Source: Octopus sinensis (Eukaryota). From it: a stretch of DNA of 64,000 nt. The position numbers and the translations under genes were made by a program. Numbering within the stretch: position 1 is the first letter of the stretch; each line of letters starts with the position of its first letter. Of the stretch, positions 18,951-54,732 are shown one piece after another. Where the stretch lies: positions 24,552,001 to 24,616,000 of the forward strand of contig NC_043006.1 of the NCBI RefSeq assembly GCF_006345805.1. The letters are read 5' to 3'. Below the pieces are notes generated by a model. It was not told the origin of the DNA and made no database searches. It saw only the letters and a list, made by a program, of their open reading frames with translations.

Positions 18951-20546
18951 CAAGTGCACCCCAGTTGGTGGCACATAAAGAACATCTGAACGTTGGGCCT
19001 CACAAAGACAAAGTGGCTGAGCTCCTTTCAAGTATTTGGCCTCATTGAGGCAAGGTGGCTGTGTTTTTTTTTCTTTGAATGTTGGGCCTCGTGGCAAAGT
19101 GGCCTCATGGCAAAGTGGCTGAGTTCCTTTCAAATGTTGGGCCTCACTGAGGCAATAACCAAGACCTTTGGCAACATGTTGCACTTGAGAAGAAGACTCA
19201 TCAAGCTGAGCAAAATCGCAGTCATGGCAGATACCAGTGTCATGCTAGTTGCACATAAACACACCCTGGTGTTACACAAATGGCACGTAAAAGTACCCAT
19301 TACACTCTTGGAGAGGTTGGTATTTGGAGGTGCATCCATCCATAGAAAACCATGCCAAATCAGGCTGGAGTCTGGGGCAGCCTTCCAGCATACCAGCCCA
19401 GTTAAACCATCCAACCCATGCCAGCATGAACAACAGGCGTTAAATGAAGATGATGGTGATCTTCATTTGAATAATGATGAAAAAGGTCCCAGTTACTGAA
19501 TTAAAACTTCCAAGATTTTAAGAGAAACAAAAGCAAAAGGCAGGAAGTTTAGGGATGCAATGAAAAATGCATCAACATATGAATTAAAAAAAAAGGTAAA
19601 AGAAAACAGAGACCACAATAAAAAAAATCTAATTGAATTAAAAGAGACATTAATATTGATATAAACTTATGAAGAAACATCAAGTGAAATGTTATTCACT
19701 TTTGTTAGAGAAAATTTTGTAAGTAAAATTTTGTATGATAAGCTAGTTTTGCTATAAGTTTTATTAACAAAGATTTCAGTTTACTGGTTTGTGATGCATC
19801 AGAAATGAAGATGAACAAATGGTCAATAATATTTAAATAGAATTTGGTAGAGTGAAAAGCATTAAATGTCTAAGTTGAGTTGTTAATAAGATTATAATCT
19901 TTCAGACTTTATGTTCACATTTATACCTTGTTGTAATTAGTCTGATCTCTAATCTTCTTTAGGTGTCTTATCCCTGGATACATTCACAGTACCAGACTGG
20001 ATTTGAACAAAGAACAATGGTTTCTAAATTAAGAGTAATAATGCTTTTATCCACTTGGCCAGTCTGGCACTATGGACACTCCCAGTAATATGACATGATC
20101 ATTATCATGATCATCATTATCATTATCATCATCATGGTGGTGATGATGATTGGAGATCAAATCAATTGAAATATGCTGAAAAAAAATTATTAAAAACATC
20201 TCCAAAACTGAGTTTAATGGACTGAAAAATTATAAATTAAAAAAAAAAAGTTTCCATGTAAACTGGTATGTCAGAAACCTCACAAGAAAGAAATATTCCT
20301 AGTTAATAAGTCCTTTAAATCCACCTACACACATAAGACTAAAAGGCATTGATATTTGTTTACAAAACATCTCAGAAAAAACAATATACCTCAGTTGGTG
20401 GAAAATTATTGATTAGAAATAAAAATGGAATTTATTTAAAAATTACCAAGTAAATTTTCAACGGCATAGGGAACAAGGAGCGATACAAAACAAACATCTG
20501 AGATTCCACTCAACTGAAAAATAGTCATTAACAAAAGACAACTCAC

Positions 20547-20600
20547 CACACAGCAACATGCAACAGGAACTTACCTAAAAAAAAAAACCATAAAAACTAT
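20547..20600 (-). promoter_or_regulatory. Candidate recursive splice site with 28-nt RS-exon
   Basis: Minus strand: tttttatggT11-AG|GTAAGT tcctgttgcatgttgctgtgtG|GTGAGT; acceptor AG at 20576-20575, second donor at 20546-20541. Confidence 0.6.
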
Positions 20601-21294
20601 AAAAATGCTTATTCAACAAACAAAAGTAAACATATTTACATAATTTCCAGGAATAAATATGATAAAGATTACTGTAATCTTTAGAAACAAAACTTCTACA
20701 ATTTCTCATTTAAAGACACAGAACCATTTATGTCATCTAAATCCAATCTGAATACAGAAGTTTTAGTTTTACCTTCTACAGAGTGCAAAACTACACTGAA
20801 TTGCAAAAGAAATGTGAGACATGTGTGACTGTGAAATATATTTAAATTTCATTATGTAAGAGATAAATTTTGATAAATCTAATAAAGTCAATTTCTTGGA
20901 TGCACTTTGACTACAGTCTATGGGTCGCTGTCATGTGTTCTGGTAGTGAGCGGATCCAACACATCGAGATTCTAGGGCGTGACACGTTCAATACCATATA
21001 TGCCCTCTCTGAGTGTTCAAAACAGCCATACACCGTCGGGATATGGAGTGCATAAGGTGGTTCACAAAAGCTACTGGCACCTGTTCCCACACCCTAAGGT
21101 AAGCTGCCTCATTTGTTGTAACATTTGCTGCTGCAATCCTTGTTGTTGTTCTCATTGTTCCTCGAGTTGTTGTTGCTGTTTTTGCAACTCAACTATCCCA
21201 GCTAACAAGTCTCCCATATTTTAGAACTTTCTTAAGATTTTTGTTTCTTTTTTGTTGAGGTATTTAATTTTCCCTGAGAATTATGGATGATATT

Positions 21295-23870
21295 TTTCAG
21301 ACGCAAGCACTCTCGTGGATTCCAGGGAGTGCATGGAGGGTATGGTTTTGGACCTAGAAATGAGGAGGGAACTAAACTGTGGGAGTTCTGCAATGCAAAT
21401 GATCTCATGATCTGCAACACTAACTTGAATAAACCAGCCAACCATTTAACTACTTATCAGTCTGGTGAGCACGTAAGTCAGTTTGCCTACCTTTTCACCA
21501 GGCAACAAGATAGATGGATGCTTAAAAATGCAAAGTCTTTTCCAGGTTAAAAGTATACAACCCAACACAGGTTATTAGTTAGTTACTTCAGAATTAGAGC
21601 TAGAAAGATTCGGAGAAGTAAACCAATCTGGAAAAGAAGACTATGGAAGCTCAAAGACCCAGCAGAGAAAAATTTAGATATTTACTTGTGGAAGCTTCTG
21701 ATGAAAGAGAGGAAGGGTTGGAGACATATAGCTTAGAGAATAACTGGAAGTTCTTGAGGGACAATCTACTGAGGGCTATGGACGAAATCTGTGGTTGGTG
21801 CAGAGTCCCAGCTAGATGAAGGGTGATATTTTAATGGAGCAAGGAGGTTGACAGTGTTATAAAAGCAAAAAGACAGGCCTGGAAAGACTGGAAAAACAGT
21901 AGAAGCAGAGAATTATATCAGGTAGCCAAAAGGCAGCTAGGCATCAGGTATATATAGCAAAAGGAGTAGCTGAAGGTAACAGAATTGCAAATGTCCTACA
22001 ACATGAGGATCAGAGGCATGAGGTGTTCAGGATTGCAAAGTAGTATATCAGAGAAAATAGAGATGTGGTAGGTGAGAAATGTGTGCAAATGGATAATGGT
22101 ATGCTTTCACTTAGTGACTCAGAGAAGAAAGATGCATGGAAGTGTCACTATGAAAGGTTACTGAATGTGGAAAATGAATGGGAGAAGGAGAGTTTACCAA
22201 ATATCAAACCAATTGAGGGAGAGGTGATAGTAGCATAATAGATAAGGCAGTTAAGGACATGAAGGCAGGGAAAGCTCCTGGGCCATCAAGAATCACTGCC
22301 AAGATGATTAAAATTTCTGGTTGCATAGGATACAGCTTAGTCCCCCGTATAGTTAATCAGGTTATTCAGGAAGGCACCATCCCCAGCGACTGGTGTAGTA
22401 GCATTATGGTTAGCTGCTACAAGGGCAAAGATGATGCCTTAGATGGAAACAACTACAAAGGTATTAAACTGCTAGACCAAGTCATGAAAATTACTGAGAA
22501 GGTCATAGCTCAATTGATTAGAAATAGAATTAAACTGGATGAAATGCAGTTTTGTTTTGTACCTGGAAAGAGTATCACAGATGCTATCTTCCTAGTGAGA
22601 CAGCTGCAGGAAAAGCACTTGGCCAAAAGTAAGCCATTGTAGTTAGCCTTCGTCAACCTGGAGAAAGCTTTTGACAGAGTTCCCTGCTCTGTTATATGGT
22701 GGTCTCTAAGGAAGTTAGGAGGAGAGGAGAGGCGTGTTAGTGTTGCCCAAGCCATGAATACAGTGATGAATTCAGTGTTCTGGTAGGGATTCACCAGGGC
22801 TCAGTTCTCAGCCCACTCTTATTCATTATAGTCCTCCAGGCTATAACAGAGGAATTCAAGACTTGGTGTCCATGGGAACTGCTATATGCTGATGACCTTG
22901 CTCTTATTACAGAATCTTTAACAAAGTGGAGAAGAAATCCCAGGTATGGAAACAAAACCTGGAATCAAAGGATAACTTTGCTAGGTTAACTTTAAGTTAA
23001 CCTAGCTAAGACAAAAGTGATTATTAGTAAGAAAGAAGATAAAACTTCCTTTCAGTCAAGCAAATGGCCTTGCTCCATATGTAGGAAAGGAGTTAGAAAA
23101 AATTCCATTTGCTGCACCCAGTGTAAACTATGGGTTTATAAGAAATGCAGTGGAATCACAAGGTAGATTAACAGATAAAGCAGTGTTTGTATGTGGCAGA
23201 TGTGCAGGAACAAAAAGCACTAAGAGCACACAGGATTTAGATTCTCTCAAATGCCTAGGAGACTCTCTTGAGGTTGTAGATAGTTTCTGTTACCTAGGTG
23301 ATCAAATTAGCAATGGTGGAGGATGCTCTGAAAGTATTGTTTCTAGAATAAGAATTGGGCGGAGGAAGTTCAGAGAACTATTACCTTTGATGGCAACAAA
23401 AGGACTCTCCCTCATAATGGAAGATAAACTATATGATGCTTGTGTATGAACGGCTATACGCCATGGTAATAAGACATGGGCTCTGAATGCAAAAGACATG
23501 CATAGACTGGAGAGAAATGAAGGTAGTATGCTCTGTTGGATGTGCAACATTTGTGCACATGTACAGCAAAGTGTAAATGTATTGAGAGAAAAGTTGGACA
23601 TAAGAGGAATCAAATGTAGCATACAAGAGAGAAGACTATGCAGGTTTGAACATGTGATGCATATGAATGAGGACAGATGCATAAAGAAGTGCTAATCACT
23701 AAAAGTGGATGGTACCTGTGGAAGATGGAGACCCAGGAAGGCATGGGATGAAGTGGTAAGGATCAATCTCAGGAAGTTGGGGTTCACAGAAGAAATGACA
23801 ATAGACCAAGATATCTGGCAATATGAAGTTCTTGAGAAGACCCGCTCATGTCAGGAAAACTGAGTTCTAG
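21295..23870 (+). mobile_element. Older decayed RTE LINE (EN, RT, PHD insert), sister subfamily of the 35433 element
   Basis: KAPGPSRITAKMIK; NNYKGIKLLDQVMK; AFVNLEKAFDRVP; GVHQGSVLSPLLFIIV; LLYADDL; WPCSICRKG..CTQCKLWV.KKC..CGRC; YLGD. Confidence 0.9.
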
Positions 23871-24299
23871 AAGCACTGTCCCACCCACACTTAACAAGAA
23901 AACTTCTCACACACTCTACCACAACAAACCAAACTACGTCTCTACATCTCTTCTCTTCCTCATATTTCTGCTTCATGTACTTTGATTACATCCCACTTCT
24001 TAATCCTATCCTCTTGACCCTGTACCACTGTATCATTGCTCTCCATTTGCCCCCCGACCTGTGTGTTCTACCCACATACCCTATCTCACTCTACCATCTA
24101 TCTGCTGTTCCACCCACATGTAACTCTTTCATACATTATGCCTGTCCTCACACCCCTGTTCCTCTGTATCATTGCTATCCGGTAGCCCCCCAACTCCATA
24201 CATACCTAGGTCTTTCGCCACTTCCTTCGCAATATCCTACCACTTGCCATTATGGCATTTGTCGTCTGGTGAGATAAAGTTTAGTTGAAGTTTGATCAT

Positions 24300-25800
24300 T
24301 GGTTGAAGTTTCTGTTATTTTAATTATTATTGTTTTGTGCTGCTTTGGCAGCAGTTTCAAGTTGTGCTTTCTCTCGATAAAGTCAAGAGATAGCTATGGC
24401 TAAAAGTTATTTTTATTCAGACCTTAGTGGTTCCAGATTCATGAGGATTTCTTTAATTCTTGTGAGGCAATCTTCAAACTTGCCTATGTGGTTTGGGGCA
24501 TCTGGTGGGCAATATGTATTGCATATGACTATATTCTGTTGTCTTATGTATACAATTAGAGTGTCACATACCAAATTTGAGTATGCCAGTAAGACCTGGG
24601 GTGTGAGGTCATCATGGATGTATACAGCAACTCCACCATGGCTCCTTTCCCTTCTGTCTGTTCGCAGTTTGGTACGTGTACTTCTGAGTCCTCTATATCA
24701 AGGCTGAGGTGAGTTTCCACGAGTGCTATGCATAGGGCTTGATTGCATGCAGTAAGATCTCTCAGGAAAGAAATTTTGTTATTTTGATGCAACAGACCCC
24801 CAATATTTAGTAAAAATATTGGGGTGACGGCTGTGCATGCATTAGGGGAGGCCACCCCGTGTCTGTTGACTGTGGTGGTTTTGCATAGTGGTGGGCAAGG
24901 TTCCTTCTTTGTGCTTGGTGTAGCCAGGTCAGCTGCTGGACAATCCTTTGCACCATGCACAAAAAAGACTCCTGCTTAGCTGCTGTGTTGCGCAGAACAT
25001 CTCAGGAGCATACTTCTTTTCTGAATGTTTTCCTGGGAGACAGTTCTTGTCTTTCCTCAGTAAAGCTTTTCCCTTTAAGGCCCCTGTAGTTCTGGCAGGG
25101 TGTCGGGTGGGAAAACTGGCAGTTTTTGCCATCCTCCCCATGCCAGCATTTGCCCTGCAGGTAAAATATACAGGTTCTTGGGTGCCTTCCAGATTTCTTC
25201 TTTCCTGTAGGGCTTTGGATGGTATTGGATCCTACATGGGATTTTCTGTTGTTTGTTTGGTGGGTTGGGGTTTCGGTTTTGGTTGTTTTGCCTTTTCCTT
25301 TTCCTTTCTTTCTTTATTTATTTTTGTTTTCCATCCTTCCTTTTTTCTTCTGTTTTTCTAATGGGGTGAGGTCTCCGTTCCTTTGTAGGACCACTGGCAC
25401 AGGGGGGCTTCCAGTTACTGCTCCCTAGGCTCCCCTATCCTTCTCTGCTTGGTCGTTCACCGGAGTAGGTGATCCATTTTCTTGAGGAACCTCTGGATTA
25501 CAGAGGCTTCCGGGTTTTGTTTCCTTTTCTTTTTCGTCTTCTCCATCCTTATTAGCCTTGCCACAATAATTTTTCATTATGTTATCCAAGGTGTTGATGT
25601 GTGGTCTTATAAGCATATAAGACCGGATAAATTCACTCTTCTTCTGCTCTATCTGGTCAATGGTTCTGTGAAAGCCATTGTTCTTTAGTACAGCAGTGAT
25701 GATGTTGTTTGGCAGATCGCCACTAGCAATCATCCATGCTCGTAGCAGAAGATTTAATTCTTTCTTCTCCCACTTTGGTGCCATCTTCGTTTTTTAAGCC
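24300..25800 (-). mobile_element. CR1-like LINE 5' half: ORF1 (Myb/SANT-like plus CCCH zinc finger) and AP endonuclease start
   Basis: ORF 25784-25425 W..KE..LLL.AW....GF.RT..QI..K; CIFYLQGKCWHGEDGKNCQFSH at about 25170-25105; EN LLNIGGL..ALVETHL..HGGVAVYIHDD. Confidence 0.75.
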
Positions 25801-26420
25801 CAGAGGGGGAGTAGAGGCTAGAGAGGTAATGAGAGATACAGGGAGGTAGAGATGGAGAAACACAGAGGGGGGAAATAGGGAAAGAAAGAGGGAGATATGA
25901 AGGAAAGAGAGAGGTGCTATGAAAGAAATAGAGAGGGTGATATGAGGAAAGCAAGGAAGTGTGGTGTGTTAAAGAGACAGAGGAATGTAGAGGAAAGGGA
26001 GAGAAAGAGAGACAATGTGAGGGAGAGGAGGGGAATAGAAAGAGAGACAGTGAAGGAGAAGAGGGGAAGAGAAAGAGAGGCAGAGTGAAGGAGAGGAGGG
26101 AAAGAGAAAGAGAGACAGAGGGAGGGAGAGGATAGCAAGAGAAAGAGAGACAGAGTGAGGGAGAAATGGAGTGAGAAGAATGGGCAAATGAGAAGTATAT
26201 GAGTGAGAGGGTGAGGTGATAGGAGGAGAGGTAGATGTGAGATGGAAAGGAAAGAGAAGTGAGAAAAGAGGAGGATATGAAAGGGAAGGAGAGGGATGAG
26301 AAAAAGAGTAAGATATGCAAGAGAGAGGGAAAGAGTAGGCGTAAAGAGAGATAAAAGAAGGGAGAGAGGAGCTGGAAATGGGGAGATATATGTAAGGAAA
26401 GAGAGAGGAAGACGCAGATA
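25800..26420. repeat. Purine-rich (GA/GGA) low-complexity tract
   Basis: About 600 bp of mainly G/A on the plus strand; source of several spurious ORFs. Confidence 0.9.
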
Positions 26421-27021
26421 TTAAGAAAGTGGGGAAACGAAAAAAATATATAATTCTAAACTAATTACGATTATATTTCTAAATAATTTTAAAGAGATAA
26501 AGTGAAAAATAGATTGAAAGCGAAGTGGATGCTGTAACAGAAGTTGAAAGAAAATTATTCTCAGAGAGTAAACAAAGATGAAGTCGTAACTCGGATGTTA
26601 CCTTAAATTAAAGGAAAATAAACAAACGAAAAAGATACTTATTCGCAAGAGGTAAAATTCCAAATCCTTGTTCTTGTACGAAGAAGTTTTCTTTCAAAAC
26701 AGAAAAGAAAACAATTCTTTTTGCTTCTTACATTCGGCTGGAAATAAGCATACGACTTGCCACCACGTGCATTTTCGACAAAAAATCTCACATGCATAAC
26801 TGACTTTAATGTATTATATTTGACTTGAAGCGAAATATATTACGGTTTTTAATTAATATATTTTTGTAGACCGTTTTGAGATAACAAGTTCTACGTTTTT
26901 GTCAGATTTAGTAGATTATTTCGTCGATTTATGCAACCATGCAACCCCTTTTTGGTGGTTTCAGAGAGCGAAAGAAAACAGGTCTTTCTTCTACAAAAGC
27001 GGAAGAATATATATATATATA

Positions 27022-27074
<53 letters not shown>

Positions 27075-27214
27075 AAAAAATATAAAAATACAAAATGGGA
27101 CAAGAAAGCAAAACATTCAAATAGACGACACAAAAAAACGGCCGGGTCATTCGAAGCCTCTAATCTTCAGTCAAGAACCGGATCATCCTCGCAAGTTCGG
27201 CCAATTATATATAT

Positions 27215-30200
27215 ATATATATATATGTCACCTTGACCAACCAGTCCGTCTTGGCGTCCATTTGACACCACTGGTCACAGCACACTGTCTACTCCTCTCC
27301 GGATCGCGCCTTTCTCATCCATATGATCCCAATCATCCTCCTGAAATAGTAACTCTACTGTCGTGGAGGCCTTCCGAGTGCTTGTATCTGCTCGTGTGGG
27401 TACCACTCAACAACTGTGCGGGTCCACCGATTATTGGTGAGCCGGGCGATATTTCCAGCCCATCTAAACTTGCTGCATGTATATTCTGCGATGACATCCC
27501 TCACGCCGGACTTCTCTCTGATGACCTTGCTACTGATGTGCTCTCTCAACGAGATTCCAAGCATTGACCTTTCCATGGCTGTTTGAACCATTACTAGTAT
27601 CTGCTCTTCTCACTTTGTTGTAGCCCATGTTTCACTACCATATAACATTGCAGGTAGAACTGTTGATGAGTTTGGCACAGGTGGTCCTGTCCAACCTTCC
27701 CTTGAGCACATCCCTTATGCCATTAAATGCCTTCCATCCGGCCCTTACTCTCCATGAGATCTCCTTTTCGATATCTCGGCACATTTTCACTTCCTGTCCC
27801 AGGTAGACATATTCCTTTACTTCCTCTATTTCATCACTGCCGATCACCATTCGACCTGTTGGTACATTGTCTGACCGCATGAACTTCGTTTTCATACGGT
27901 TCATCGAGACCTACTGCAGAGCTTTTGATGTTGATCTCCGTCAGCATGGTCTGAAGCTGATCCATGTTTCAGTGATGATTACGATGTTGTCAGCGAAACA
28001 GAGGTGGATGAGGAGCTCGCCATTGATGTTGACACCACCTTGCCAGTCGATGCCTCTGATGATCTGCTCGAGACATGCGGTGAAAAGTTTTGGAGAGATC
28101 GTATCTCTTTGCTTCACTCCCTTCTCGACCGGCACTTGTACGGGTGATAACAGCAGAGCTATGTCAGTGGTGCATCCGGAATTTGCCTCCCTGAGCAGTT
28201 GCACACATTGCGCCTCGACTCCTTGCCTCTGCAGCGAGTTCAGCACTGTGTTGGTTTTGATGCTGTCGAAGGCCTTCTCATAGTCTAAAAACGCAATGCA
28301 AAGAGGCAGCTTGTACTCATTCACTCGCTCAAGCAGTTGTGTTAGAGTAAATATATGGTCCATCGTGCTGTAGTTCTTCCGGAAGCCTGCTTGTTCCCTC
28401 GGTTGTTTGTCGAGATGTCATGATAACCTGTTCAGAATTATCTTTGTGAACAGCTTGTACACGTGAGACAGCAGGCATATGGGTCGGTAGTTCTTTAGAT
28501 CTTCTCTATCGCCCTTCTTATATAGCAGGATGGTATTTGACTCTTTCCGCTGCGAGGGAATTCTTCCCTCGTCTAGATAGTGCGTGAATCGCTCAGCGAG
28601 GATTTTCCAGAGCTGCTCTCTGCCTGACTTTAATACATCCGATGTTATACCGTCTTTCCCTGGCGCCTTTCTGTTTTTCATCAAGCCAATGGCTCTTTCA
28701 ACCTCACTGACAAGGATAGGTAGCACATTTTCTTCCTGTTGGAGTGGTGGTAACGGCTGGACATTTCTGGTAGATTTAAAGAGCTTGGTGTAGAAGTCTC
28801 TGCAAACTTTTTCCATCTCGCTCTTATCGTTGACTGGTATTCCATCTGTATTTTTCAAGGCCATCACCTCCGATCTATATAGTACCATGTCCCTCTTGAG
28901 GTTCTTCTTTTCCTCTGTGGCCTTCAAGAGCTTCTCCATCCAGTATGCCTCAAAGTCTCTCTTTAGTTGCTGACGAATCACTCTGCTGAGAAGGGAATAT
29001 TCAAGGTGATCTTCAATAGTCCTCTTCATATCTTTCCTCTTCTTGAGTAACTTAATAGTTTCTTCCGAGATTCTTCCCTTCTTCTCTCTTAAACATACTC
29101 CCTTACCCTTCCTTAAACACTCCTTCAGTTTCCCTATCAGTGAGATGTAGTCATTGTCTATGTCATCTCTTTGGCACCAGTTTTCCTGCATGATGGCTTC
29201 CTGCTGCTTCACCTCATTGTAGACTCGGACACGTTTTCCCTTCGAAGCAAATACAGCGCCACCTTCTCCCTCTTCTCGTTGATGACGACCCTCGTCCTCA
29301 CCAGACGATGATCGCTGCCGGTGTTGAATGGTGTCACGACGGAGACGTCATGTAATTTGAGTCGCTTATCAACCAGGATGTAGTCAATCTCACTTCGGTG
29401 CTTAGAGTTCGGCGATATCCAGGTCCATCTCTTCCTCTCCCTCAATAGGCTCTTTCCGATGTAGAGTCGCCTCGCCTCGGCCATGGTAGCCAAACGTTCT
29501 CCTCTCTCGTTTCTCTCTCCTATGCCGAATCTCCTGACGTACTCTTCCCCTTGTCATCCATGTCCAACATTTGCGTTGAAGTCTCCCATCATGACAGTGT
29601 AAGTGAACTTCACAGCCAGCCCTTCGTCTAGCTGTCGATAGAATTCTTCCACCTCGTCGTCATCACTGGCACTTGTGGAAGGTAACAAAATAATTTGATA
29701 AAAAATGTGAATTTTTAATTATTTTCTGAGATTTTACAAAAACACCAAAACACCAATCCATGATGATATGAACTGACAAGAAGCGACCCTCGAAGCCCAT
29801 TCCTTACTTACGATGAATCCGATACCTCCGACCAATCTAGTACCTTCTGCTCTCCCTAATCTCACAGTGCATCCATCTTGCCATCGTATACTCACTTCCT
29901 TCTTGCAACATGTCTCGCACAGCCCTAACACGTCGCACCTGATCTTCTTCCTCTCCTCCATTAGGTGGTTCAGTTCTTTCCACCCTGCCAAGGACCTGCA
30001 GTTGTAGGTGCATATGGCAAGGTTAGTCCTGTTCCATGACGGCCCTCGGGAACCTGTGATTCTTAGCAGCCTCACGTTGCTCGGGTTGTAATCCGCTGTC
30101 ATGGAGTGGCCCAATTGACGTGCAGGGAACTGAGGCCCTTTTCTTTTTCTCTTCATTCTTCATGCTGTTTTAGCCATAAGATGACGTCATCCCACTGGCT

Positions 30201-30375
30201 GGGCAGGCAGGCCGGCATTTTGTTGGATGGCTGTTGACTGTTCAGGAGTTCATCCAACCTTTGATGGGTCTCATTTTTCACTCCACAGGATGTCCAACAG
30301 CACCCTCCTCACCAAGTGAGCCTGGTGGGGTTGTCAGTTTAGTCACCGACATCCCGACCATGCAACAGGTTGTAC
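27215..30375 (-). mobile_element. Near-full-length RTE LINE of a second family (RTE-1-like, no PHD), frameshifted
   Basis: ICTYNCRSLA..DVLGLCET; MGDFNA; EIDYILV; GSDHRLV; KAPGKDGIT; NYRPICLLS; FLDYEKAFDS; GVKQ.DTISPKLF; LCFADNIV; 5' UTR at about 30150-30375; 3' end abuts (AT)n. Confidence 0.9.
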
Positions 30376-30419
30376 TCAATTACATGTTACCAGTCGCACT
30401 CTAGAGTAATCTGACATAA

Positions 30420-30424
<5 letters not shown>

Positions 30425-30451
<27 letters not shown>

Positions 30452-32090
30452 GTGTGTATATATATATATAAAGTGGAGAAGAGAAGGATAATGGTGTGGG
30501 AATCTCTCAACTGGAAGGTTCTGAGAATCCAGGAACACATTCTGCGGACCATGTCAACTTTATTGCTTATATGTGTAGCCCAGCTTATGTTGTTGTCCAC
30601 TGTTACTCCCAAGTCTGTGATGTTGTTAGATGCCATGAGAATTTCACCAGAAGGGAGTATGAGTGTTTCAGAGTGTCCTCCCTTCCAAAGTGGATCAGTT
30701 CGAATTTGTCTTCATTTAGCAACATGTTCTTTTCCGCCCATTGGACAACAGCCAGTAGTCTGACTGAAGGCTTATCCGGTCATCCACGCCATTGATGACC
30801 TTCTGGAGCTTGGAAGCATGAGCGAAGATTCTGATGTTACTGTGTTTGATGATATCAGTAATGTCATTTATGTAGATGATGAAGAGAAGTGGGCCCAACA
30901 CAGTGTCTTGTGGGACACCACTACTGACTTTGTCTGGGCTGGATTTGACTCCTTCGACTACAACATGTTGGGTTCTGTTTGACAGGAAGCATTTGATCCA
31001 CTGCAGCAGCTTTCCAGTGACACCAATATTGGACAACTTTCTCAAAAGGATCTTATGATCAACCCTGTCAAAGGCCTTGCTGAAATCAAGGTAGATAACA
31101 TCAGTGTTGGAACCCTCTCCCAAGGCTCTCAAAATGTCATCAAAATGATGATGCCTGTGCCAGGCAATCCCTTCCATTACGGAATCCATGCTGGTTGGAG
31201 TTCAGCATATTATGACTCTCAAGGAAGTGAGTCATTCGCGATCTCACCACTCTCTCAAATACTTTAATAATATAGGAGGTGAGTGAGATTGGACAGTAAT
31301 TCACAGCAAGGAATTTGTTTCCTTTTTTGAAAACTGGGACAGCAGACTGGGATAGGTTTTCTGGTATATATCCAGCATCCAGTGAGTTCCGCCACAGATT
31401 AACTAGAGTGGGTGCAAGTTGGTGTTGACACATCTTCAAGACACAAGCAGGGAACCTATCGGGACCTACTGCTGAATTATGCTTGATTTTCTTTATTGCT
31501 GCTAAGACATCAGGGGCGCCAAAGGTTATGTCCGATAAAGTATATTGGGGAGTAACATCAATGATACAGCCCAGATCAGTCATATCAGGATATCTGAAAA
31601 CAGAGCAGTATTGTTTCTGCAGCACCTTTCCCATGGTTTTGGCATTGTCTTGAAGAGTGCCATTTTCATCAAACAGAGGGCCAACAGTAGAGCCAGTGAC
31701 TTTGTGTTTTTTTGCAAATGAAAATAACACTTTGGGATTAAGTTTGATCTTCTCAATGGCCCAGGCCTCTTCGGCTCATCTCTGACTATTGATGATAGAC
31801 ATCATGCTGTTTTGGAGGTTATGTTTTTTTAGTCTCTAGTGACGTGATGGCAGTCAGGTTGGTGTGTTGCTGTTGAGAGTATTTCAGTTTGTTGATTTTT
31901 TTGTTAATTCTTTTGATTTTCCTGATGAGTGTTTTTCTATTTCTAGGGATTCTGCACTTAGATTTGTTTACAGATCTTAATGGGGTGTGTTTTGCACATA
32001 TGTTTGTAATAGTGTCTACAATGACTGCCAGGACTTTTTGATGTTAGTTGGTGTGTATGTGTGCGTGAAGGACCAATCGACTTGTGCAAG
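30425..32090 (-). mobile_element. CR1-clade LINE RT fragment
   Basis: SAVGPDRFP; VPVFKKG..NYCPISLTS; NQHGFRNGRDCL; DVIYLDFSKAFDRVDH; SGVPQDTVLGPLLFIIYIND. Confidence 0.9.
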
Positions 32091-32109
32091 ATCATTACTG
32101 ATCGCTATA

Positions 32110-33194
32110 TATATATATATATATATAATCTCTTATTATTGTGTTTTCTTATTTTGATATCTTTACCTCTTAACCTCTTATCTCTTACAAGTTATCAATG
32201 TTCTTAAAGAGAAATATAAGCTTTCTAGTTACTTAAGTCTAGTAGCGTTGATTACAACATACCCATAATAAAGTACAAATATTTGTGTATATTTGCATGT
32301 GTGCGCATAGTTAAATATGTGAATGTATCTGTGCTCAACTCCCCCCCCACCATTTTTTTTTATTCTTAGCTTATAACTAATATAAAGATAATATGATTTA
32401 TTGCCCCAGGATTCCGTAAGTAAATACCCAGAGCAATCTTTATAGAAAACACCTTATAAGTAAATAACTAAGCACAGGAATGAATATTAAACTAGTTCTA
32501 TGTAATCTTCCCTTTCTAATGTTGAAAATTGGTATATATGCACAGTTTATCTATTCTGGTTATAATATCACTTTTAGTAAACGTAAATTTTATCTTCATA
32601 CAACATAATATTGTTTATATACAATCATCCATTGTACCCCATGATAATTTCCTCTGTATTAACATCATAGGTTTTATTAGCATTTTGCCCCTTTAACCGG
32701 TAATTAACATCTTGATTTAGGGTCTTCCCTTACCCAGCCTCCTTTTATAGACAGTTACTTATACATTTTCTATATCCTGACAATATTTATGACCATACCC
32801 AGCTATAAACTGTCAACTCACTCTGTCTATCCATTCTAAACAGACACTGTCATCTAGCCTTAGATTTGGTAGCTGATAAAAAAAAGACTAATAAATTAAA
32901 AGTGAACCACAATCATTTACAAACTACCACCCTAACAAACTTCATACAGTTCTTAGAAGCATAGTATATTCTGAGTCATATTAGTAGCAACATGGACTTT
33001 CTCCCTCCTCTTGCTCTATTACAGAATTTGAGTAAAATTATATTAATGTGTCCAACTGATTAAAAAAATCTATTTATTTATGCAGCTGAGGATAGCCCTG
33101 CATTTAAATTGATGTAATGATTGTATTGTTCAAGTAAATGGAGCCACTTGAAACGGTTGCACTACATTACCTCTTGATATTCTGTTGCTTATTT

Positions 33195-33229
<35 letters not shown>

Positions 33230-34560
33230 GAAAATTACTAACTGGAACCCGGATATACATATATACCGCTCTGGATCCGAATGTAAGCGTTATTAATAAT
33301 ATTATGAATGATAATAATGATAACATTAATGGTATTGACAACGATAATGATGCTAACTTTAATGACACTTTAGAAATTATTATGAAGTAATATAATGTAC
33401 AATTGACTATGTATATTTGCATCTAGGTACTAATTTGTGTATGTTTATTATCACAATATTAAGTCGAAAAACTAAGACATTGAATGTGAAACACATATAT
33501 ATGTTTACTAATTTATATTATTTATTTATATCATTATGTATATGTATATTTTTATATGTATAGGAGTGTGAGTATATGCACTCATATGTATATGTTGTAT
33601 TATGGGTATGCACCCACACCAATGTGGGTATATATGTAGACTGAGTTATATTACATAATCTCCGAAGAGGCATTATGATATTTTTGTAAATGTCTCATTT
33701 ATATCTATATATTGACCAACCATAAAGGGCTAATATTGATAAAATGAGACATACTTATCTACATGGCCGAAACAGCTGTAAGATGCAATCTATACTTATA
33801 TTCTCTTTTATATATATTCCACTTATTATACAACATTACTCTTTTATGTACACTTTTTTATGTACATTCCTTTATGCACACTGATTTGTTCTGCTCTTTA
33901 TATTTAACCCTACAGTCTCTTATGTAGTGGTTTAATAAAGTATGTGATTGAGTATTATCTGGTAATTGATATTTGATTTAGATGCATTTCTCCATTTTCT
34001 TATCTTGTATATATATATAAAAGCAATTATAAGTGCCATACTTGAACTTGAAGGTGGAAATTAATTTTGGTGTCATATCCGCTATAAACCTACCCTCTCG
34101 CGTCAAATATAATAAAATCATGGGATATTATTGTATATGGTGAATTAAACTGCATTGTATATGTTATAAGCTATGTGTTATGGTATGTGGTGTGCTATAT
34201 GTAATTACTATCCCATGGTAATTCCTGCCTAGTTAGTTTGACTTCATCATAATTTTAGTGATTACACTATTTTTCCCCTACTGATCATATTATATTTGTA
34301 ATGACTTTATGTATGTAAGTCTCCTGACTAATTATATACCCCCTAGAAACTACAAAATCATATATACAATAGCACCTATAACATTACAACTTATAAAATG
34401 TATTTCGGTCTAAATATTTCTAACTAACCTCACTACATCCATACCGACTACCACCTCTTTTCTGGTCACCTTTATCTCTTCTATACCTCAAATTTTAATC
34501 CTGTCTTTTTAAATGTAGGTTATATGTAAACTTAATCATACAGCAATGCCTGCCACTCAT
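32110..34560 (+). mobile_element. Possible heavily decayed Penelope-like element or pLTR region
   Basis: Very AT-rich block with only faint PLE-like peptide traces; support comes mainly from the PLE-type hammerhead at 33658-33784. Confidence 0.35.
33658..33784 (+). ncRNA. Type I hammerhead motif with elongated stem II (U4-to-C substitution)
   Basis: atct-CCGAAGA-ggc..[atgtctcattt/aaatgagacat hairpin]..gcc-GAAA-cagctg-T-A-agat; palindromic stem III. Confidence 0.55.
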
Positions 34561-35519
34561 GTTTCCATATTAGTTACATCAGTTCATGTAGCAAGTGTTT
34601 TCAGAGAGATACAAATTTAGCTGAAATCATATTCTACATGTTGTGTACTTCAACTCTACACTAACGACTAGTAGAAATCAACAAGGAAACTTCTAGGATT
34701 ACTGACCTCACATCATATCCTACTATCCTAAAAAAAGGAAACATTAGATAATGTAGATCAAATGTAGACAAAATGTCCCAGAGAAAATAACAGGATGGCT
34801 CTGGTTACTATGAGTGGAATGTCTTTGATCATAAGTCTGCTTGTTCTACACAACATTTGTTCACTAATATTAAGTTCCTCTTGCAAATAAAATATTTTGC
34901 TGATGGTGAGGGCCTTGATAACCTAGTCCAGATAATATTTTAAATAGAACCAGGCTGGACTGGTTCAACCATATTAATGAAGTAACCTAAATAAATAAAC
35001 TCCAATGAGAATTCAATCCTCTGTAAGGCTTTCCTCACTGTAACCATTCACTCCACAATGGATGTAGTATATATCTCAACTATTTTAGCTTCAGTCCTAA
35101 GACTCACAAGCCACTGAACTTACAGTGGGGTTTCTGAATTACCAATAAGCTACATAATGTGCAAAACTTCCAAATTTTACTAAGGGAACAAATTAAAAAT
35201 ATGTTTTTTGTACTTTGATAGGTCATTTTCTTGCAATAGTTCATCAGATATAACAGTATATACTTAGCATTTGCAGACACAACTTTTTTGCTGCTTCAGT
35301 TTATTCTGATAAGCACACCTAATCTATAGTTTCAGTGCTTGTACATAGTAACAAGAACAAAACTAAAACAGTGAAATAACATTTACAAACTGACTTCACA
35401 CAAAATAGATATTTTTTTCACTTTCTTTTCAGGTACATGACACGGCTGCCCCTCATCCCAGGGTCTCAGATGCCCACACCTCCCACACCCTCAGAGTTGG
35501 CACACTCAATGTTGGCACA

Positions 35520-38510
35520 TTGAAAGGTAGGTCTGGAGAGATTGTAGAGCTGCTTGAACGGAGACGTGTGGATGTATGTTGTATCCAGGAAGTAAGGTGG
35601 AGAGGAGGTTCCGCTAGGCTCCTCACAGGCAAGGAACACAGGTACAAGATTTTCTGGGCAGGGAACACTGACGGGGTCGGGGGCGTGGGTATACTTCTTG
35701 CAGAGAAATGGGTAGGTAAGGTAATTGAGGTAGTCAGAGTAAGTGACAGAGTAATTAAAATTTGATTAGTCCTTCACCACAGGACAGTTACCATCATCTC
35801 AGCATATGCCCCTCAACCAGGGCTACCGGAAGGACAAAAAGACCAATTCTATGACACCCTATTGCGAACTACCTCGTTGACAAATGACAGTGACCTTCTC
35901 TTCGTGGCAGGTGATTTCAATGGACATGTCGGACGGCATGTCGGGGGCTTCCATGGAGGCTACGGTTTCGGCTCTCGTAATGAGGAGGGAACCAGGCTGC
36001 TGGAGTTCTGCGATGCAAATGACCTTATGGTCTGCAATACCAACTTCAGGAAACTCTACTCTCACCTAGTCACCTACCGTTCTGGCAGACACACCAGCCA
36101 GATTGACTACATCCTTGCCAGAAAAAGGGAAAGAGGGCTGATTATAAATGCCAAAACCTTTCCAGGCGAAGAATGCACTCCTCAACATAGATTAGTAGTT
36201 AGCGACTTCAGGATCAGAGCTAAATGGTTGCCCAGAAGAAGACCTGCTTGGAGGAGAAGGGTCTGGAAGCTTAAAGATCCTGCAAATGGACAGAGATTTA
36301 GAGACATACTACTCGAAGCCTTTGACGAAATAGAAGGGGATATAGCTTCACTTAATGTGGAAGACAACTGGAGATTTCTACGGGACAATCTGCTGACAGC
36401 CACTGACCAGATCTGTGGATGGAGCAAAGTACCATCTCAACCCAGAGTAACATGGTGGTGGAACACTGTGGTTGACAGGGCTATTAGACAAAAGAGACAG
36501 GCTTGGAAGGACTGGAAGAACGGTGGTAGCAGGGAATTGTATCAGACAGCCAGAAGGGAAGCTAGGAGACAGGTTTATTTAGCCAGAGGGGAAGCGGATA
36601 AGAAAAAATTTGCCAATGTTCTGCGCCATGAGGATGAAAGACTTGAGGTATTTCGTGTTGCAAGGCAGTGTGTGAGAGAGAATCGTGATGTGGTAGGAGA
36701 GAAGCATGTTCGCATGGATGATGGTTCACTTGCGCTAAATGAGGATGCAAAGAGAGAGGTTTGGAGATGCCACTATGAAAGGTTGCTGAATAAAGAAAAT
36801 GAATGGGATAAGGAGAGTCTGCCGAATGTTGACCCAACAGAGGGACCAGCTATCCGAGTTGATAGTTCCGTGGTAGCTAAGGCAATTAGAAGCATGAAGA
36901 CAGGGAAAGCCCCAGGCCCATCAGGAATTACTGCAGAGATGCTCAAAATATCTGGCAGTGTCGGCTAAAGCCTAGTCACCCGTATAGTCAACCAGGTGAT
37001 ACACGAAGGAGTCATACCCAATGACTGGTGTAGCAGCGTACTAGTCAACTGCTACAAAGGTAAAGGTGATGCCCTAGATACAAATAATTACAGAGGTATC
37101 AAGCTGTTGGATCAGGCAATGAAGGTTACGGAGAGGGTCATAGCCCAACTAATTAGAGAGAGAGTTAGTTTAGATGAGATGCAGTTTGGGTTTGTGCCAG
37201 GGAAAAGCACCACTGATGCTATATTCCTGGTAAGGCAGCTGCAGGAGAAATACCTAGCCAAAGATAAGCCCCTGTACCTGGCTTTCGTTGACATGGAGAA
37301 AGCCTTTGATAGGGTCCCCCGATCCCTCATCTGGTGGGCAATGAGGAAACTAGGGATAGATGAATGGCTGGTGAGGGCTGTGCAAGCTATGTACAGAGAT
37401 GCCGTAAGCAAGGTTAGGGTTGGCAACATGTACACAGAAGAATTCAAAGTAGAGGTTGGGGTCCACCAGGGTTCAGTACTCAGCCCCCTCCTATTTATCA
37501 TAGTCCTCCAGGCAATAACAGAGGAATTCAAGACAGGTTGCCCCTGGGAGCTCCTCTATGCTGACGACCTCGCTCTAATTGCTGAGTCACTATCAGAACT
37601 GGAGGAGAAGTTCCAGGTGTGGAAGGAGGGTTTAGAATCGAGGGGCCTTAGAGTCAACCTAGCTAAAACCAAAGTACTAATAAGTAGAAAGGTAGGCAAT
37701 CCACAAATGTCCTCAGGAAGATGGCCCTGCTCGATCCGTAGAAAAGGTGTAGGTAGAAACTCTATAAGATGTACCCAGTGTAAGCTATGGACACATAAGA
37801 GGCGCAGCAATGTCAAAGGTAGGCTAACTGGGAAGATAGTTTTTATATGTGGCAGATGCTCGGGAGCATTGACCTCCGAAAATCTGCAGAAAACAACTTC
37901 CGTCACTTTCCAGGGGAAAAAATTAGAAGTAGTTGATAGTTTCCGTTATCTAGGTGACCAAGTCAGTAGTGGGGGTGGGTGCGCTGAGAGTGTAACTGCT
38001 AGAATAAGAATAGCCTGGGCAAAGTTTAGGGAGCTCTTACCTCTGCTGGTGACTAAAGGCCTCTCGCTCAGAGTAAAGGGCAGACTGTATGATGCATGTG
38101 TTCGAACTGCCATGCTACATGGCAGTGAAACATGGGCCGTGACTGCTGAGGACATGCGTAAGCTCATGAGGAATGAAGCCAGTATGCTCCGATGGATGTG
38201 TAATGTCAGTGTACTTACTCGACAGAGCATTAATTCCCTAAGAGAAATGTGGTACCTAAGAAGCATCAGTTGTTGCGTGCAAGAGAGACGATTGCGCTGG
38301 TATGGTCATGTGGCGAGAATGGATGAAGATAGGTGTGTGAGAAAGTGCCAATCCCTAGCAGTTGAGGGAACCCATGGAAGAGGTAGACCCAGGAAAACCT
38401 GGGACGAGGTGGTGAAGCACGACCTTCGAACGTTAGGTCTCACCATGGAAATGACTAGAGACCGAGACCTATGGAAGTATGCTGTGCGTGTGAAGACCCG
38501 GCAAGACTAG
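35520..38510 (+). pseudogene. RTE ORF2 (AP endonuclease, RT, PHD insert) with two premature stops
   Basis: ORFs 35520-35765, 35862-36968 and 36996-38510 share one frame; stops TGA 35763 and TAA 36966; motifs IQEVRW, GDFNGH, IDYIL, QGSVLSP, YADD, YLGD. Confidence 0.92.
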
Positions 38511-38691
38511 TGAAGCCATAACCCGTGGCCCCTACCTGGGACGTAGTCAGTCCGCCTGTGCATACCTTCCTGCTTGTGACACTTGTGAAGACCTGTTGAG
38601 GCAAATCAAATCAAAGTCAAATCGAATCAAGTCAAACCAAATCAAAATAGATGAACATCAATGGAATTTGTATCCTTGTGGTACCAGTGCC

Positions 38692-39085
38692 GGTGGCACA
38701 TAAGAAAACCATCTGAACGGGACCGTAGCCAGTACCGCATCGACTGGCCTCCGTGCTGTGGGCACGTAACAAACACCGTCCGAGCGTGGCCGTCTGCCAG
38801 CCTCGTCTGGCACCTGTGTCGGTGGCACATAAAAACAGCATCCAAGCGTGGCCGTCTGCCAGCCTCGTCTGGCACCTGTGTCGGTGGCACATAAAAACAC
38901 CATCCGAGCGTGGCCGTCTGCCAGCCTCGTCTGGCACCTGTGTCGGTGGCACATAAAAACACCATCCAAGCGTGGCCGTCTGCCAGCCTCGTATGGCACC
39001 TGTGTCGGTGGCACATAAAAACACCATCCGAGCGTGGCCGTTCGCCAGCCTCGTCTGGCACCTGTGTCGGTGGCACATAAAATCA
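38692..39085 (+). repeat. 62-bp tandem repeat in the RTE 3' UTR (about 6.5 units)
   Basis: ggtggcacat recurs at 38821, 38883, 38945, 39007 and 39069 (62-bp period), with diverged units at 38692 and about 38758. Confidence 0.95.
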
Positions 39086-39344
39086 CCCACTACACTCTCG
39101 GAGTGGTTGGCGTTAGGAAGGGCATCCAGCTGTAGAAACACTGCCAGATCTGACTGGCCTGGTGCAGCCTTCGGGCTCCCCAGACCCCAGTTGAACCGTC
39201 CAACCCATGCTAGCATGGAAAGCGGACGTTAAACGATGATGATGATTTTTTCCCTTTCAAATAACGGAGTCTTATTTTTTGCAATTTTTAAAAAAAATTT
39301 TAACACAACACTAGGCCTAGAGAAATTTATACCTTTTTATAAAT

Positions 39345-39600
39345 ACCAAATAGGTACAGGCATGGCTATGAGATTAAGAAGTTTAATTCTCAACAATGTG
39401 GTTTTGGATTCAGTCTCAAAGTGTGGCACCTTGGGTAAGTGTCAAAATCCTCATGAGTGGCTTGGTAAACAGGAAATGAAAGATGATATTTGTATGTGTG
39501 TATGAGTCACATTGTCTCGTCATTGCATAATAGTTGTAAATAAGTGTCACCATCATACAAGTGGAGACATTTGTTTCTGATGCTAAATGCCAAAGTACAA
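39345..39600 (+). mobile_element. SINE fragment (family of 1850)
   Basis: aggcatggctatgagattaagaagttt...ggcaccttgggtaagtgtc...gatagttgtaaataagtgtcaccatcatacaag-like body. Confidence 0.6.
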
Positions 39601-40685
39601 GATTTTCGATTTCCTTCAACTAGATTTCTCTTTCCTACACACAGAGAAAAAAGATCTGTATTTCCATCATTGCTCCTTTTATTAGTTTTGAACTAATAGG
39701 TTCAGAGTTTAGATTATTTTGGAAAAAATTTAACCGAATTAATTAAAATTCTTCTTCCAGTATTAAGTGTACACAGTGATACGAGTTAATCATTTAACTA
39801 GTTAATTTGCTAAAAATTATTACATGCTATTGCAATGCACAAAACACTGTTTGTGCTATATATCCCTAACCCTATTTGAATAATAACCTTTCTACATAAA
39901 TTTCACCCATGCATGCAAGTGACGTAACAAAACTAACACTATTGGAATTTATTTTAAATTACAGAATTAACAGCTTTCAGTTTCAAGTTAACTCGTTCAC
40001 AACTTCAAGTACTTAGAGAAGAAAAATATTTCATAGTAAACCTTTAAAAATGAAAAACAATTCCATAGCATTTTTAAACAGAAAAGCTGGGCGGAGGAGT
40101 TCAACAAAAAAATAATAAAAACTATAATCATAATAATTTCATATTTGAGCACAAAACTAAGGAAATTCTCACAGAGAACATGTCCAATTAAATTGATAGC
40201 AAATTCTGACCCGTAATTATTTAAAAACGTCTGAAAGATGAACCGCAAAGAAAAGGCTTCACAGGATTTAAATTCATAAACAAAGGGACATAACTAAGTA
40301 CTTACTATAAGTGACTACTTCTCCGACCTATCAAATTAGTATCTACTATAATAATACTCGTGTATTTCCCCGTCACAACATATGAAAGAGAAAGGAAGGG
40401 GTAATAGATGAATAAGGAAGGGAGGGGTGATGTCAAACTTGGTAGTGGAATGATGGAAGTTCTATGGTGAAAAAAACAATCAAACAGCGTTTCAACTGCG
40501 TGAGTATATGTGTGTGTATGTAAGAGGGAGTCATGTGAATATTTGTGTGTGTGTGTGTGCACGCGTGCGCGCAATGGAAGAGGGATGGTGAACGTTCAAG
40601 ACTGAAAAGAAAAATCAGAGTTTCAACTCCATGTGAGTATGTGTGTGGGTGTACAAGGAAAGTATGTCAATGTTTGTATGTGTGA

Positions 40686-43400: not shown

Positions 43401-43501
43401 TACTAGTGCCAATCCTACCACAGTGCTTATTTTTATCATTTTTTTCAGCTACAAAATTCGTTTAACATCAGCTTTCTAATCTTAATAAACCAATTACTTA
43501 C

Positions 43502-43592
43502 CGAATATTTCATGAGAATTGAACTGAATGTAATTTTCAGGCGAACAATTATTCGAACTTACCTGAAACAAACAGGAATGAGAGAAATTAAG
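43502..43592 (-). promoter_or_regulatory. Candidate recursive splice site with 61-nt RS-exon
   Basis: Minus strand: CTTAAT branch-like, tttctctcattcctgtttgttt, CAG|GTAAGT (43565-43557), 61-nt segment ending TTCG, then a second GTAAGT (43501-43496). Confidence 0.7.

Positions 43593-54691: not shown

Positions 54692-54732
<41 letters not shown>

What the first reader, a model, noticed from the sequence alone, without database searches (positions are those of the whole stretch)
20541..20600. Second minus-strand AG|GTAAGT site with 28-nt RS-exon, 23 kb from the first
Seen: T11-AG|GTAAGT (AG at 20576-75), then 28 nt, then TG|GTGAGT (20546-41). It shares strand, GTAAGTTC start and 3n+1 length with the 43562 site. 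My rough estimate is about one bare YAGGTAAGT by chance in 64 kb on both strands; two with pyrimidine tracts, downstream consensus donors and the same strand is much less likely. Caveat: there is another AG (ttttatag) about 22 nt upstream. Inference: a series of ratchet points subdividing one very long intron.
Basis: partly seen in the sequence, partly recalled or inferred. Interest (0 to 1): 0.7.

Follow-up and report, generated by a model that had tools for sequence, protein, structure and literature searches.

The report
Two candidate recursive splice sites
Two short minus-strand sequences 23 kb apart each have the full signature of a ratchet point, the internal site that flies and vertebrates use to remove very long introns in steps; chance is an unlikely explanation, but I had no expression, gene-annotation or cross-species data, so this remains a prediction.

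Summary
On the minus strand, T11-AG(20576-75)|GTAAGTTC opens a 28-nt stretch that ends at TG|GTGAGT (20546-41). The companion site, CAG(43564-63)|GTAAGTTC, opens 61 nt that end at CG|GTAAGT.

The bare 9-mer YAGGTAAGT is not significant: 3 hits against 1.5 expected. The composite is. Of the six AG|GTRAGT sites on both strands, only these two have a pyrimidine tract of at least 80% and a consensus donor within 100 nt. I expected 0.001-0.09 such sites per window, giving P of about 4e-5 to 4e-3 for two. None of 179 composition-matched permuted motifs reproduces the pair.

Neither site lies in a repeat, and the two share only the motif. Their anatomy matches fly ratchet points with cryptic RS-exons: branch-point-like motifs, a strong regenerated donor, and short out-of-frame exons.

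The defining tests could not be run. I found no cellular exon on either strand and no bulk asymmetry that indicates the transcribed strand. I had no RNA data and no related genome. I could not confirm that the window comes from an octopod.

Verdict: probably real recursive-splice elements in a long intron of a minus-strand gene (about 0.55). This would be a new member of a known kind, of moderate interest.

The parts
20577..20596 (-). Pyrimidine tract of site 1: TTTTT-A-T-GG-T11, with the T11 run at 20577-20587
   Evidence: pyrimidine fraction 0.84. Only 1.3-1.5% of all AGs in the window have a tract of 0.8 or more.
20591..20600 (-). Two branch-point-like TTTAT motifs (A at 20600 and at 20591, 25 and 16 nt before the acceptor G), plus the competing AG at 20598-20597
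   Evidence: If the A at 20600 is the branch point, the AG at 20598-97 is only 2-3 nt away and would be skipped. That step is inference.
20575..20576 (-). AG of the candidate recursive acceptor, site 1
   Evidence: Crude acceptor PWM score 8.1; only 11 of 3861 minus-strand AGs score 8 or more.
20547..20574 (-). 28-nt candidate RS-exon. Its first six bases, GTAAGT (20574-20569), would be the donor regenerated after ligation to an upstream exon
   Evidence: Length is 3n+1; frame 2 starts with TAA.
20541..20546 (-). GTGAGT donor that closes the 28-nt RS-exon (context GTG|GTGAGT)
   Evidence: donor PWM 10.0. It is one of 12 minus-strand donors scoring 9 or more outside transposons.
43565..43591 (-). 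Site 2 upstream signals: TTAAT (A at 43588, 25 nt before the acceptor G), CTCAT (A at 43579, 16 nt before), and the pyrimidine tract tttctctcattcctgtttgtttc. No intervening AG
   Evidence: pyrimidine fraction 0.84.
43563..43564 (-). AG of the candidate recursive acceptor, site 2 (cAG)
   Evidence: acceptor PWM 8.4.
43502..43562 (-). 61-nt candidate RS-exon starting with GTAAGT (43562-43557)
   Evidence: Length is 3n+1; stops in frames 2 and 3, frame 1 open.
43496..43501 (-). GTAAGT donor that closes the 61-nt RS-exon (context TCG|GTAAGT)
   Evidence: donor PWM 9.0.
20575..43562 (-). Predicted recursive intron segment of 22,988 nt, removed in one step from the regenerated donor at 43562 to the acceptor at 20576-75
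   Evidence: Inferred from the two sites. It contains LINE copies on both strands and no detected cellular exon.

Best explanation
Both sites are intronic recursive splice sites (ratchet points), each with a short cryptic RS-exon, inside a very long intron of a gene transcribed on the minus strand, that is from high to low window coordinates.

The mechanism below is inferred from the fly and vertebrate systems; none of it is shown here.
1. As the polymerase passes 43.5 kb, U2AF and U2 recognise the branch point (TTAAT), the pyrimidine tract and CAG.
2. U1 binds the GTAAGT 61 nt downstream, so the 61-nt stretch is defined as an exon.
3. The upstream exon is ligated to position 43562. This removes the first intron segment as a lariat and recreates a consensus donor, exon|GTAAGTTC.
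4. That regenerated donor out-competes the RS-exon's own donor. It is spliced to the next acceptor, the T11-AG at 20576, which removes a further 22,988 nt.
5. The same cycle repeats at the 28-nt RS-exon.

Neither RS-exon reaches the mRNA. If either were included, its 3n+1 length would shift the reading frame.
For: Shown by sequence: the exact anatomy at both sites.

Of the six AG|GTRAGT sites on both strands, only these two have a pyrimidine tract (0.84) and a GTRAGT within 100 nt, and both are on the minus strand.

Chance expectation of such composites is 0.0008 per window in Markov simulations. Under an independent-feature null from real AGGT sites it is 0.009-0.09, giving P = 4e-5 to 4e-3 for two. 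None of 179 permuted motifs matches the true motif's two sites.

The density is 2 per 64 kb of strand, or 3.1 per 100 kb. Shepard et al. 2009 (PMC2773006, Table 2) report about 0.1 per 100 kb as background and 2.2 in long fly introns.

The sites are not repeat copies and share only an 18-nt motif.

The regenerated donors have all six intronic positions at consensus. By a crude PWM they are at least as strong as the RS-exon donors: 10.4 and 12.8 against 10.0 and 9.0. This fits the donor-competition model.

Joseph & Lai 2021 (PMC8605326) describe fly ratchet points as a splice acceptor|donor (SA|SD) junction with a cryptic RS-exon that is short, of variable length (about 50 nt), flanked by a downstream donor, and generally out of frame. 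The sites here match that description.
Against: There is no evidence that the minus strand is transcribed or that the window is intronic. I detected no cellular exon on either strand. Transposon orientation, poly(A)-signal counts, splice-motif counts and base skews show no significant strand bias.

The 28-nt RS-exon is short for exon definition. Site 1 also has another AG 22 nt upstream.

A plus-strand ratchet-like junction exists at 16868, though it has no downstream donor.

My thresholds were chosen after seeing the sites. A Gb-scale genome would hold hundreds to thousands of chance three-feature sites, so if very many windows were scanned, a chance pair in one window is conceivable.

Conservation could not be examined.
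Confidence: 0.55

Rival explanations
1. Chance. In AT-rich, T-run-rich DNA, two AGGTAAGT octamers happen to follow pyrimidine runs and to have another GTRAGT nearby. Nothing is spliced there.
For: The bare motif is within expectation: 3 hits against 1.5, and 20 of 100 shuffles reach 3. A third bare hit at 60292 and a plus-strand ratchet-like site at 16868 show that partial versions arise without the full signature. With lenient thresholds the P value rises to 4e-3. Thresholds were set post hoc, and the number of windows screened upstream is unknown. No independent sign of transcription or of an intron was found.
Against: None of 3921 simulations gave two composites. None of 179 permuted control motifs gave two. 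Both sites share the strand, the same branch-point spacing (25 and 16 nt) and 3n+1 exon lengths.
Confidence: 0.2
2. They are real exons of a minus-strand transcript that are actually included in RNA: alternative cassette or poison exons, or exons of a UTR or non-coding RNA. In that case they act as regulatory or expressed RS-exons rather than as silent ratchet points that subdivide one intron.
For: The exon-definition anatomy is the same. Flies have a smaller set of expressed RS-exons (PMC8605326), and in vertebrates RS-exons are often annotated, included exons (PMC6224609 abstract). The downstream donors are strong, at 10.0 and 9.0. The 61-nt exon is open in frame 1.
Against: Both lengths are 3n+1, so inclusion would shift the frame. 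The regenerated donors are consensus GTAAGT, and under the competition model they should win. No neighbouring exons were found.
Confidence: 0.15
3. The motif belongs to something else: a by-product of a transposon end (the T11 would be an A11 tail on the plus strand), a U1-binding cluster that suppresses premature polyadenylation, a decoy exon, or a plus-strand feature.
For: On the plus strand, site 1 reads ...GGAACTTACCT-A11, which resembles the 3' end of a retroposon. The window is rich in LINE and SINE-like fragments.
Against: The region of either site has no other copy in the window. Apart from the motif, the two sites share no homology. No terminal inverted repeats or direct repeats flank them. 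Rfam and tRNA scans of the whole window found nothing. The site 2 tract is mixed C/T, not a poly-A tail.
Confidence: 0.1

Closest known systems
Drosophila intronic ratchet points with cryptic RS-exons (Ubx, kuz, Bx; Duff et al. 2015; Pai et al. 2018, PMC6110457; Joseph & Lai 2021, PMC8605326)
   Same: A long pyrimidine tract precedes a juxtaposed acceptor and donor, YAG|GTAAGT. A short cryptic exon (about 50 nt in flies; 28 and 61 nt here) is closed by a second donor and is out of frame. The regenerated donor is at least as strong as the exon's own donor. Sites are spaced tens of kilobases apart. The density per 100 kb is comparable to long fly introns.
   Different: No junction, sawtooth, lariat or conservation evidence exists here, and the host gene and its strand are unknown. 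The organism is not an insect. 28 nt is at the short end for an RS-exon.
Vertebrate RS-exons (Sibley et al. 2015; Blazquez et al. 2018, PMC6224609)
   Same: An RS-exon is defined first and spliced to the preceding exon. This creates a recursive 5' splice site that competes with the RS-exon's own donor.
   Different: Vertebrate RS-exons are often included or annotated, and their use depends on the exon junction complex and on the preceding exon. Vertebrate long introns show almost no sense-strand enrichment of ratchet-point motifs (ratio 0.9-1.5; PMC2773006). The density here is fly-like.
Pseudoexons and poison exons in long introns
   Same: An acceptor and a donor bracket a short, frame-disrupting stretch deep in non-coding DNA.
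   Different: Ordinary pseudoexons do not begin with a consensus donor. Here both begin with GTAAGTTC directly after the AG, which is the feature specific to recursive sites.

Membership tests
Intronic recursive splice site (ratchet point) with RS-exon | [quoted passage not shown] | tested here: met
   tAG|GTAAGT at 20577-20569 and cAG|GTAAGT at 43565-43557 on the minus strand.
Intronic recursive splice site (ratchet point) with RS-exon | A functional-looking acceptor: pyrimidine tract and branch-point motif upstream of the AG | tested here: met
   Pyrimidine fraction is 0.84 at both sites, against 1.3-1.5% of AGs reaching 0.8. yUnAy motifs lie 25 and 16 nt upstream at both sites. Caveat: site 1 has another AG 22 nt upstream.
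Intronic recursive splice site (ratchet point) with RS-exon | A downstream donor that closes a short cryptic RS-exon (about 50 nt in flies) | tested here: met
   GTG|GTGAGT lies 28 nt downstream and TCG|GTAAGT 61 nt downstream. About 3.8% of random positions have a GTRAGT within 15-100 nt. 28 nt is short.
Intronic recursive splice site (ratchet point) with RS-exon | RS-exon generally out of frame or carrying stop codons | tested here: met
   Both lengths are 3n+1, and TAA is at position 2-4 of both. The host reading frame is unknown, so the consequence is inferred.
Intronic recursive splice site (ratchet point) with RS-exon | The regenerated donor competes successfully with the RS-exon donor | tested here: inconclusive
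   A crude PWM gives 10.4 and 12.8 against 10.0 and 9.0. However, the -3 to -1 positions of the regenerated donor depend on an unknown upstream exon, and no species-trained model was available.
Intronic recursive splice site (ratchet point) with RS-exon | Lies on the sense strand of a long intron of an expressed gene | tested here: inconclusive
   No cellular exon was detectable on either strand among 383 of the 450 candidate ORFs of 48 aa or more; 67 + strand ORFs were not scanned. No strand asymmetry appeared in transposon orientation, poly(A) signals, splice motifs or base skews. No annotation was available.
Intronic recursive splice site (ratchet point) with RS-exon | Splicing intermediates: exon-to-RS junction reads, sawtooth read density, segment lariats | not testable with these tools
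   No RNA-seq data are reachable. These are the criteria used by Duff 2015 and Pai 2018.
Intronic recursive splice site (ratchet point) with RS-exon | Strong conservation of the acceptor|donor core with a poorly conserved exon body | not testable with these tools
   Exact look-ups of window ORFs are not on record. The best LINE relative is 73% identical and comes from a metagenome scaffold, so the source lineage is absent from the protein collection. Two metagenome DNA scans found nothing.

The most novel reading that the evidence does not exclude
Their fly-like density and out-of-frame RS-exons would suggest that stepwise removal of giant introns through cryptic RS-exons is an ancestral bilaterian mechanism. 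They would also suggest that the very long genes of cephalopods depend on it. The paper library holds no study linking recursive splicing with cephalopods or molluscs.
Probability: 0.4. Interest if true: 0.6.

Novelty: new member of a known kind. Interest (0 to 1): 0.4.

Why it matters
Recursive splicing is documented experimentally only in flies and vertebrates. For other invertebrates there is only motif enrichment, in sea urchin, mosquito, bee and beetle (PMC2773006). Confirmed ratchet points in another phylum would show how widely long-intron genes rely on this mechanism. They would also give annotators a sequence signature for telling giant introns from intergenic DNA, and would mark positions where single-base changes could cause frame-shifting exon inclusion. 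On present evidence it is a testable prediction, not a discovery.

Tried and rejected
1. Bare-motif statistics are not significant, so the argument rests on the composite.
2. Repeat or transposon origin is rejected. BLAST of 1.6 kb around each site against the window found no other copy, and the two sites share only 18 nt. A self-BLAST repeat map and a direct/inverted repeat search agree.
3. Known RNA genes: an Rfam gathering scan and ARAGORN found nothing.
4. Host gene search. Pfam scans of 383 stop-to-stop ORFs of 48 aa or more on both strands gave only RVT_1, Exo_endo_phos, zf-CCHC, a mariner-type Transposase_1 and weak spurious hits. The last 50 plus-strand ORFs, beyond about 46 kb, were not scanned.
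5. Inferring the transcribed strand. LINE orientation is 5 plus against 4 minus. Counts of AATAAA, GTAAGT, T-runs and branch motifs, and base skews, show nothing significant. Strong donor-like motifs are fewer on the minus strand (19 against 33, p = 0.07), which is only suggestive.
6. Organism and conservation. Exact look-ups of two window ORFs were not on record. The LINE reverse-transcriptase search gave at best 73% identity, to a metagenome scaffold, and 50-59% to Hydractinia, Branchiostoma and Mercenaria, with no cephalopod label. Two exact-match scans of metagenome contigs returned zero hits.
7. My first simulation script timed out and gave no output. It was repeated.

Full report
**The observation**

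- A run of eleven T (20587-20577) is followed by AG (20576-75).
- GTAAGTTC then starts a 28-nt stretch (20574-20547), followed by GTGAGT (20546-41) in the context TG|GTGAGT.

The companion site is ...cctgtttgtttcAG (43564-63)|GTAAGTTC. A 61-nt stretch (43562-43502) follows, then CG|GTAAGT. Both stretches are 3n+1, and both start with the same eight bases. The two AGs are 22,988 nt apart.

**Is it more than chance?**

The bare 9-mer YAGGTAAGT is not. It occurs three times, all on the minus strand, against 1.5 +/- 1.2 in shuffles, and 20 of 100 shuffles reach three. The third copy (60292-60300) lies in TAGC/TAGA low-complexity sequence with no pyrimidine tract.

The composite is different. Of the six AG|GTRAGT sites on both strands, only the two minus-strand sites have a pyrimidine-rich upstream 18 nt (0.84) and a second GTRAGT within 100 nt.
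- In the real window, only 1.3-1.5% of AGs have such a tract, and only 3.8% of positions have a GTRAGT 15-100 nt downstream. In 3921 first-order Markov simulations built from 1-kb blocks, the mean composite count was 0.0008, and none had two.
- I built a more conservative null from the 481 real AGGT sites, multiplying the frequencies of the upstream-tract, donor-tail and next-donor features. It expects 0.009-0.09 three-feature sites. That gives P = 4e-5 to 4e-3 for two, depending on thresholds.
- As a control that keeps all real-sequence heterogeneity, I replaced GTRAGT with each of its 180 composition-matched permutations. Only the true motif yields two three-feature sites. The only other non-zero case is GTA[AG]GT, which overlaps the true motif and counts the same site.

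Two caveats apply. Thresholds were set after seeing the sites. At these rates a Gb-scale genome would contain hundreds to thousands of chance three-feature sites. The weight therefore lies in the same-strand pair within one window, not in either site alone.

**Context**

The window is AT-rich (about 37% G+C) and full of transposon debris. It holds:
- a nearly intact LINE at 35430-38510 (+) and four further copies of that family;
- other LINEs on the minus strand at about 24.4-25.8 kb and 27.4-31.8 kb;
- gag-pol remnants at 6.3-8.5 kb;
- long (TA)n arrays.

Neither candidate site lies in an intra-window repeat. The two sites share only an 18-nt match, which is the motif itself, and no terminal repeats flank them. 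The idea that the T11 is the tail of a plus-strand retroposon therefore has no support. Rfam and tRNA scans are empty.

**Anatomy in detail**

Both sites have yUnAy branch-point-like motifs at the same two distances, 25 and 16 nt before the acceptor G. Site 1 has TTTAT at both distances; site 2 has TTAAT and CTCAT.

At site 1, the worrying upstream AG sits 2-3 nt after the first of these adenosines. If that adenosine is the branch point, this AG is too close to be used, and the T11-AG is the first usable acceptor. This is inference.

By a crude PWM, the two acceptors are among only 11 minus-strand AGs (of 3861) scoring 8 or more. The regenerated donors score 10.4 and 12.8, and the RS-exon donors 10.0 and 9.0. 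Three of the 12 strong donor-like motifs outside transposons on the minus strand belong to these two sites.

**Comparison with what is known**

- Joseph & Lai 2021 (PMC8605326) describe fly ratchet points as juxtaposed splice acceptor|donor (SA|SD) sites. [quoted passage not shown] Every sequence-level item is met here.
- Pai et al. 2018 (PMC6110457) define recursive sites by the same AG/GT juxtaposition. They validate them by junction reads, sawtooth read density, lariats and conservation.
- Shepard et al. 2009 (PMC2773006) counted ratchet-point motifs per 100 kb. Complementary strands give about 0.1 in all animals. Long introns give 2.2 in fruit fly, 0.5-1.0 in sea urchin, mosquito, bee and beetle, and only about 0.1 in vertebrates. 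Two sites in 64 kb of one strand is 3.1 per 100 kb, which is fly-like.

**What could not be established**

I could not show that the minus strand is transcribed, or that the window is an intron.
- Pfam scans of 383 stop-to-stop ORFs of 48 aa or more on both strands returned only transposon domains and weak noise. This fits a giant intron and intergenic DNA equally well.
- Transposon orientation (5 plus, 4 minus), poly(A)-signal counts, T-runs, branch motifs and base skews show no significant strand bias.
- Strong donor-like motifs are somewhat rarer on the minus strand, 19 against 33 (p = 0.07). That is the direction expected for a sense strand, but it is only suggestive.
- A relaxed scan finds one plus-strand ratchet-like junction at 16868 (CT-rich tract, cAG|GTAAGC). 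It has no donor within 400 nt downstream. It lowers the significance of acceptor-donor juxtaposition alone (P of about 3e-3 to 4e-2 for the two-feature version), but it does not share the full signature.

Cross-species conservation was out of reach.
- Exact look-ups of window ORFs are not on record.
- The LINE reverse transcriptase finds at best 73% identity, on a metagenome scaffold, and 50-59% in Hydractinia, Branchiostoma and Mercenaria.
- Two DNA scans of metagenome contigs were empty.

**Verdict**

The most likely reading (about 0.55) is that these are genuine recursive-splice elements: two ratchet points with 61-nt and 28-nt cryptic RS-exons that divide a very long minus-strand intron into segments of about 23 kb. 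The rivals are:
- chance (about 0.2);
- real but included alternative or poison exons of a minus-strand transcript (about 0.15);
- an unrelated origin (about 0.1).

The paper library holds no study of recursive splicing in cephalopods or molluscs. If confirmed in such an animal, this would extend a known mechanism to a new phylum, making it a new member of a known kind. It is a well-supported, cheaply testable prediction rather than a demonstrated feature, so I score its interest as moderate.

Noticed in passing
window 16848-16877 (+): A plus-strand ratchet-like junction, tcccttctctcctcttatacAG|GTAAGC. Its pyrimidine tract is stronger than at the two minus-strand sites, but no donor-like motif follows within 400 nt. 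It may be chance or a cryptic site.
   Followed up: partly
window 60292-60300 (-): A third exact YAGGTAAGT on the minus strand. It is embedded in TAGC/TAGA low-complexity sequence, with no pyrimidine tract and no downstream donor, so it is best read as a chance hit.
   Followed up: yes
window 35430-38510 (+), with copies at 17260-18930 (+), 21314-23845 (+), 46416-47011 (-) and 48560-49289 (+): A nearly full-length LINE with endonuclease and reverse-transcriptase domains; its database relatives also carry a PHD finger. It has only two in-frame stops, so it is probably a young family, and four older or truncated copies lie in the same window. Closest database relatives are 73% identical (a metagenome scaffold) and 50-59% identical (cnidarian, amphioxus, bivalve).
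   Followed up: partly
window 38761-39087, 57395-57624; related copies at 1858-2271, 49678-50076, 54022-54376, 63057-63227: A G+C-rich 62-bp tandem repeat unit (GGCACATAAAAACACCATCCGAGCGTGGCCG...). It sits directly 3' of the LINE and recurs in both orientations across the window. It looks like a satellite-like tail or a SINE-like family.
   Followed up: no
window 54640-55585: A 946-bp (TA)n microsatellite (476 copies, 76% matches). Many shorter TA/TG arrays lie elsewhere in the window.
   Followed up: no
window 24416-25793 (-): A run of minus-strand ORFs: a Myb/SANT-like stretch, a CCCH zinc finger (weak Pfam zf-CCCH and Torus hits somewhere in this batch, which I assign to 25005-25313 by reading the sequence), and an endonuclease-like N-terminus. 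I read it as the 5' part of another LINE family, not as a cellular exon.
   Followed up: partly
window 6311-8454 (-) and 45456-45809 (-): Gag-pol remnants with a zinc knuckle and a protease-like motif at 6311-8454. At 45456-45809 there is a 118-aa ORF whose motif NNAVEGFH resembles MULE-type transposases. That resemblance is from memory; Pfam gave no hit at E <= 0.01.
   Followed up: no
window 20591-20600 and 43579-43588 (-): Both candidate sites carry branch-point-like yUnAy motifs at identical distances, 25 and 16 nt before the acceptor G. This regularity is unexplained and may be coincidence.
   Followed up: no
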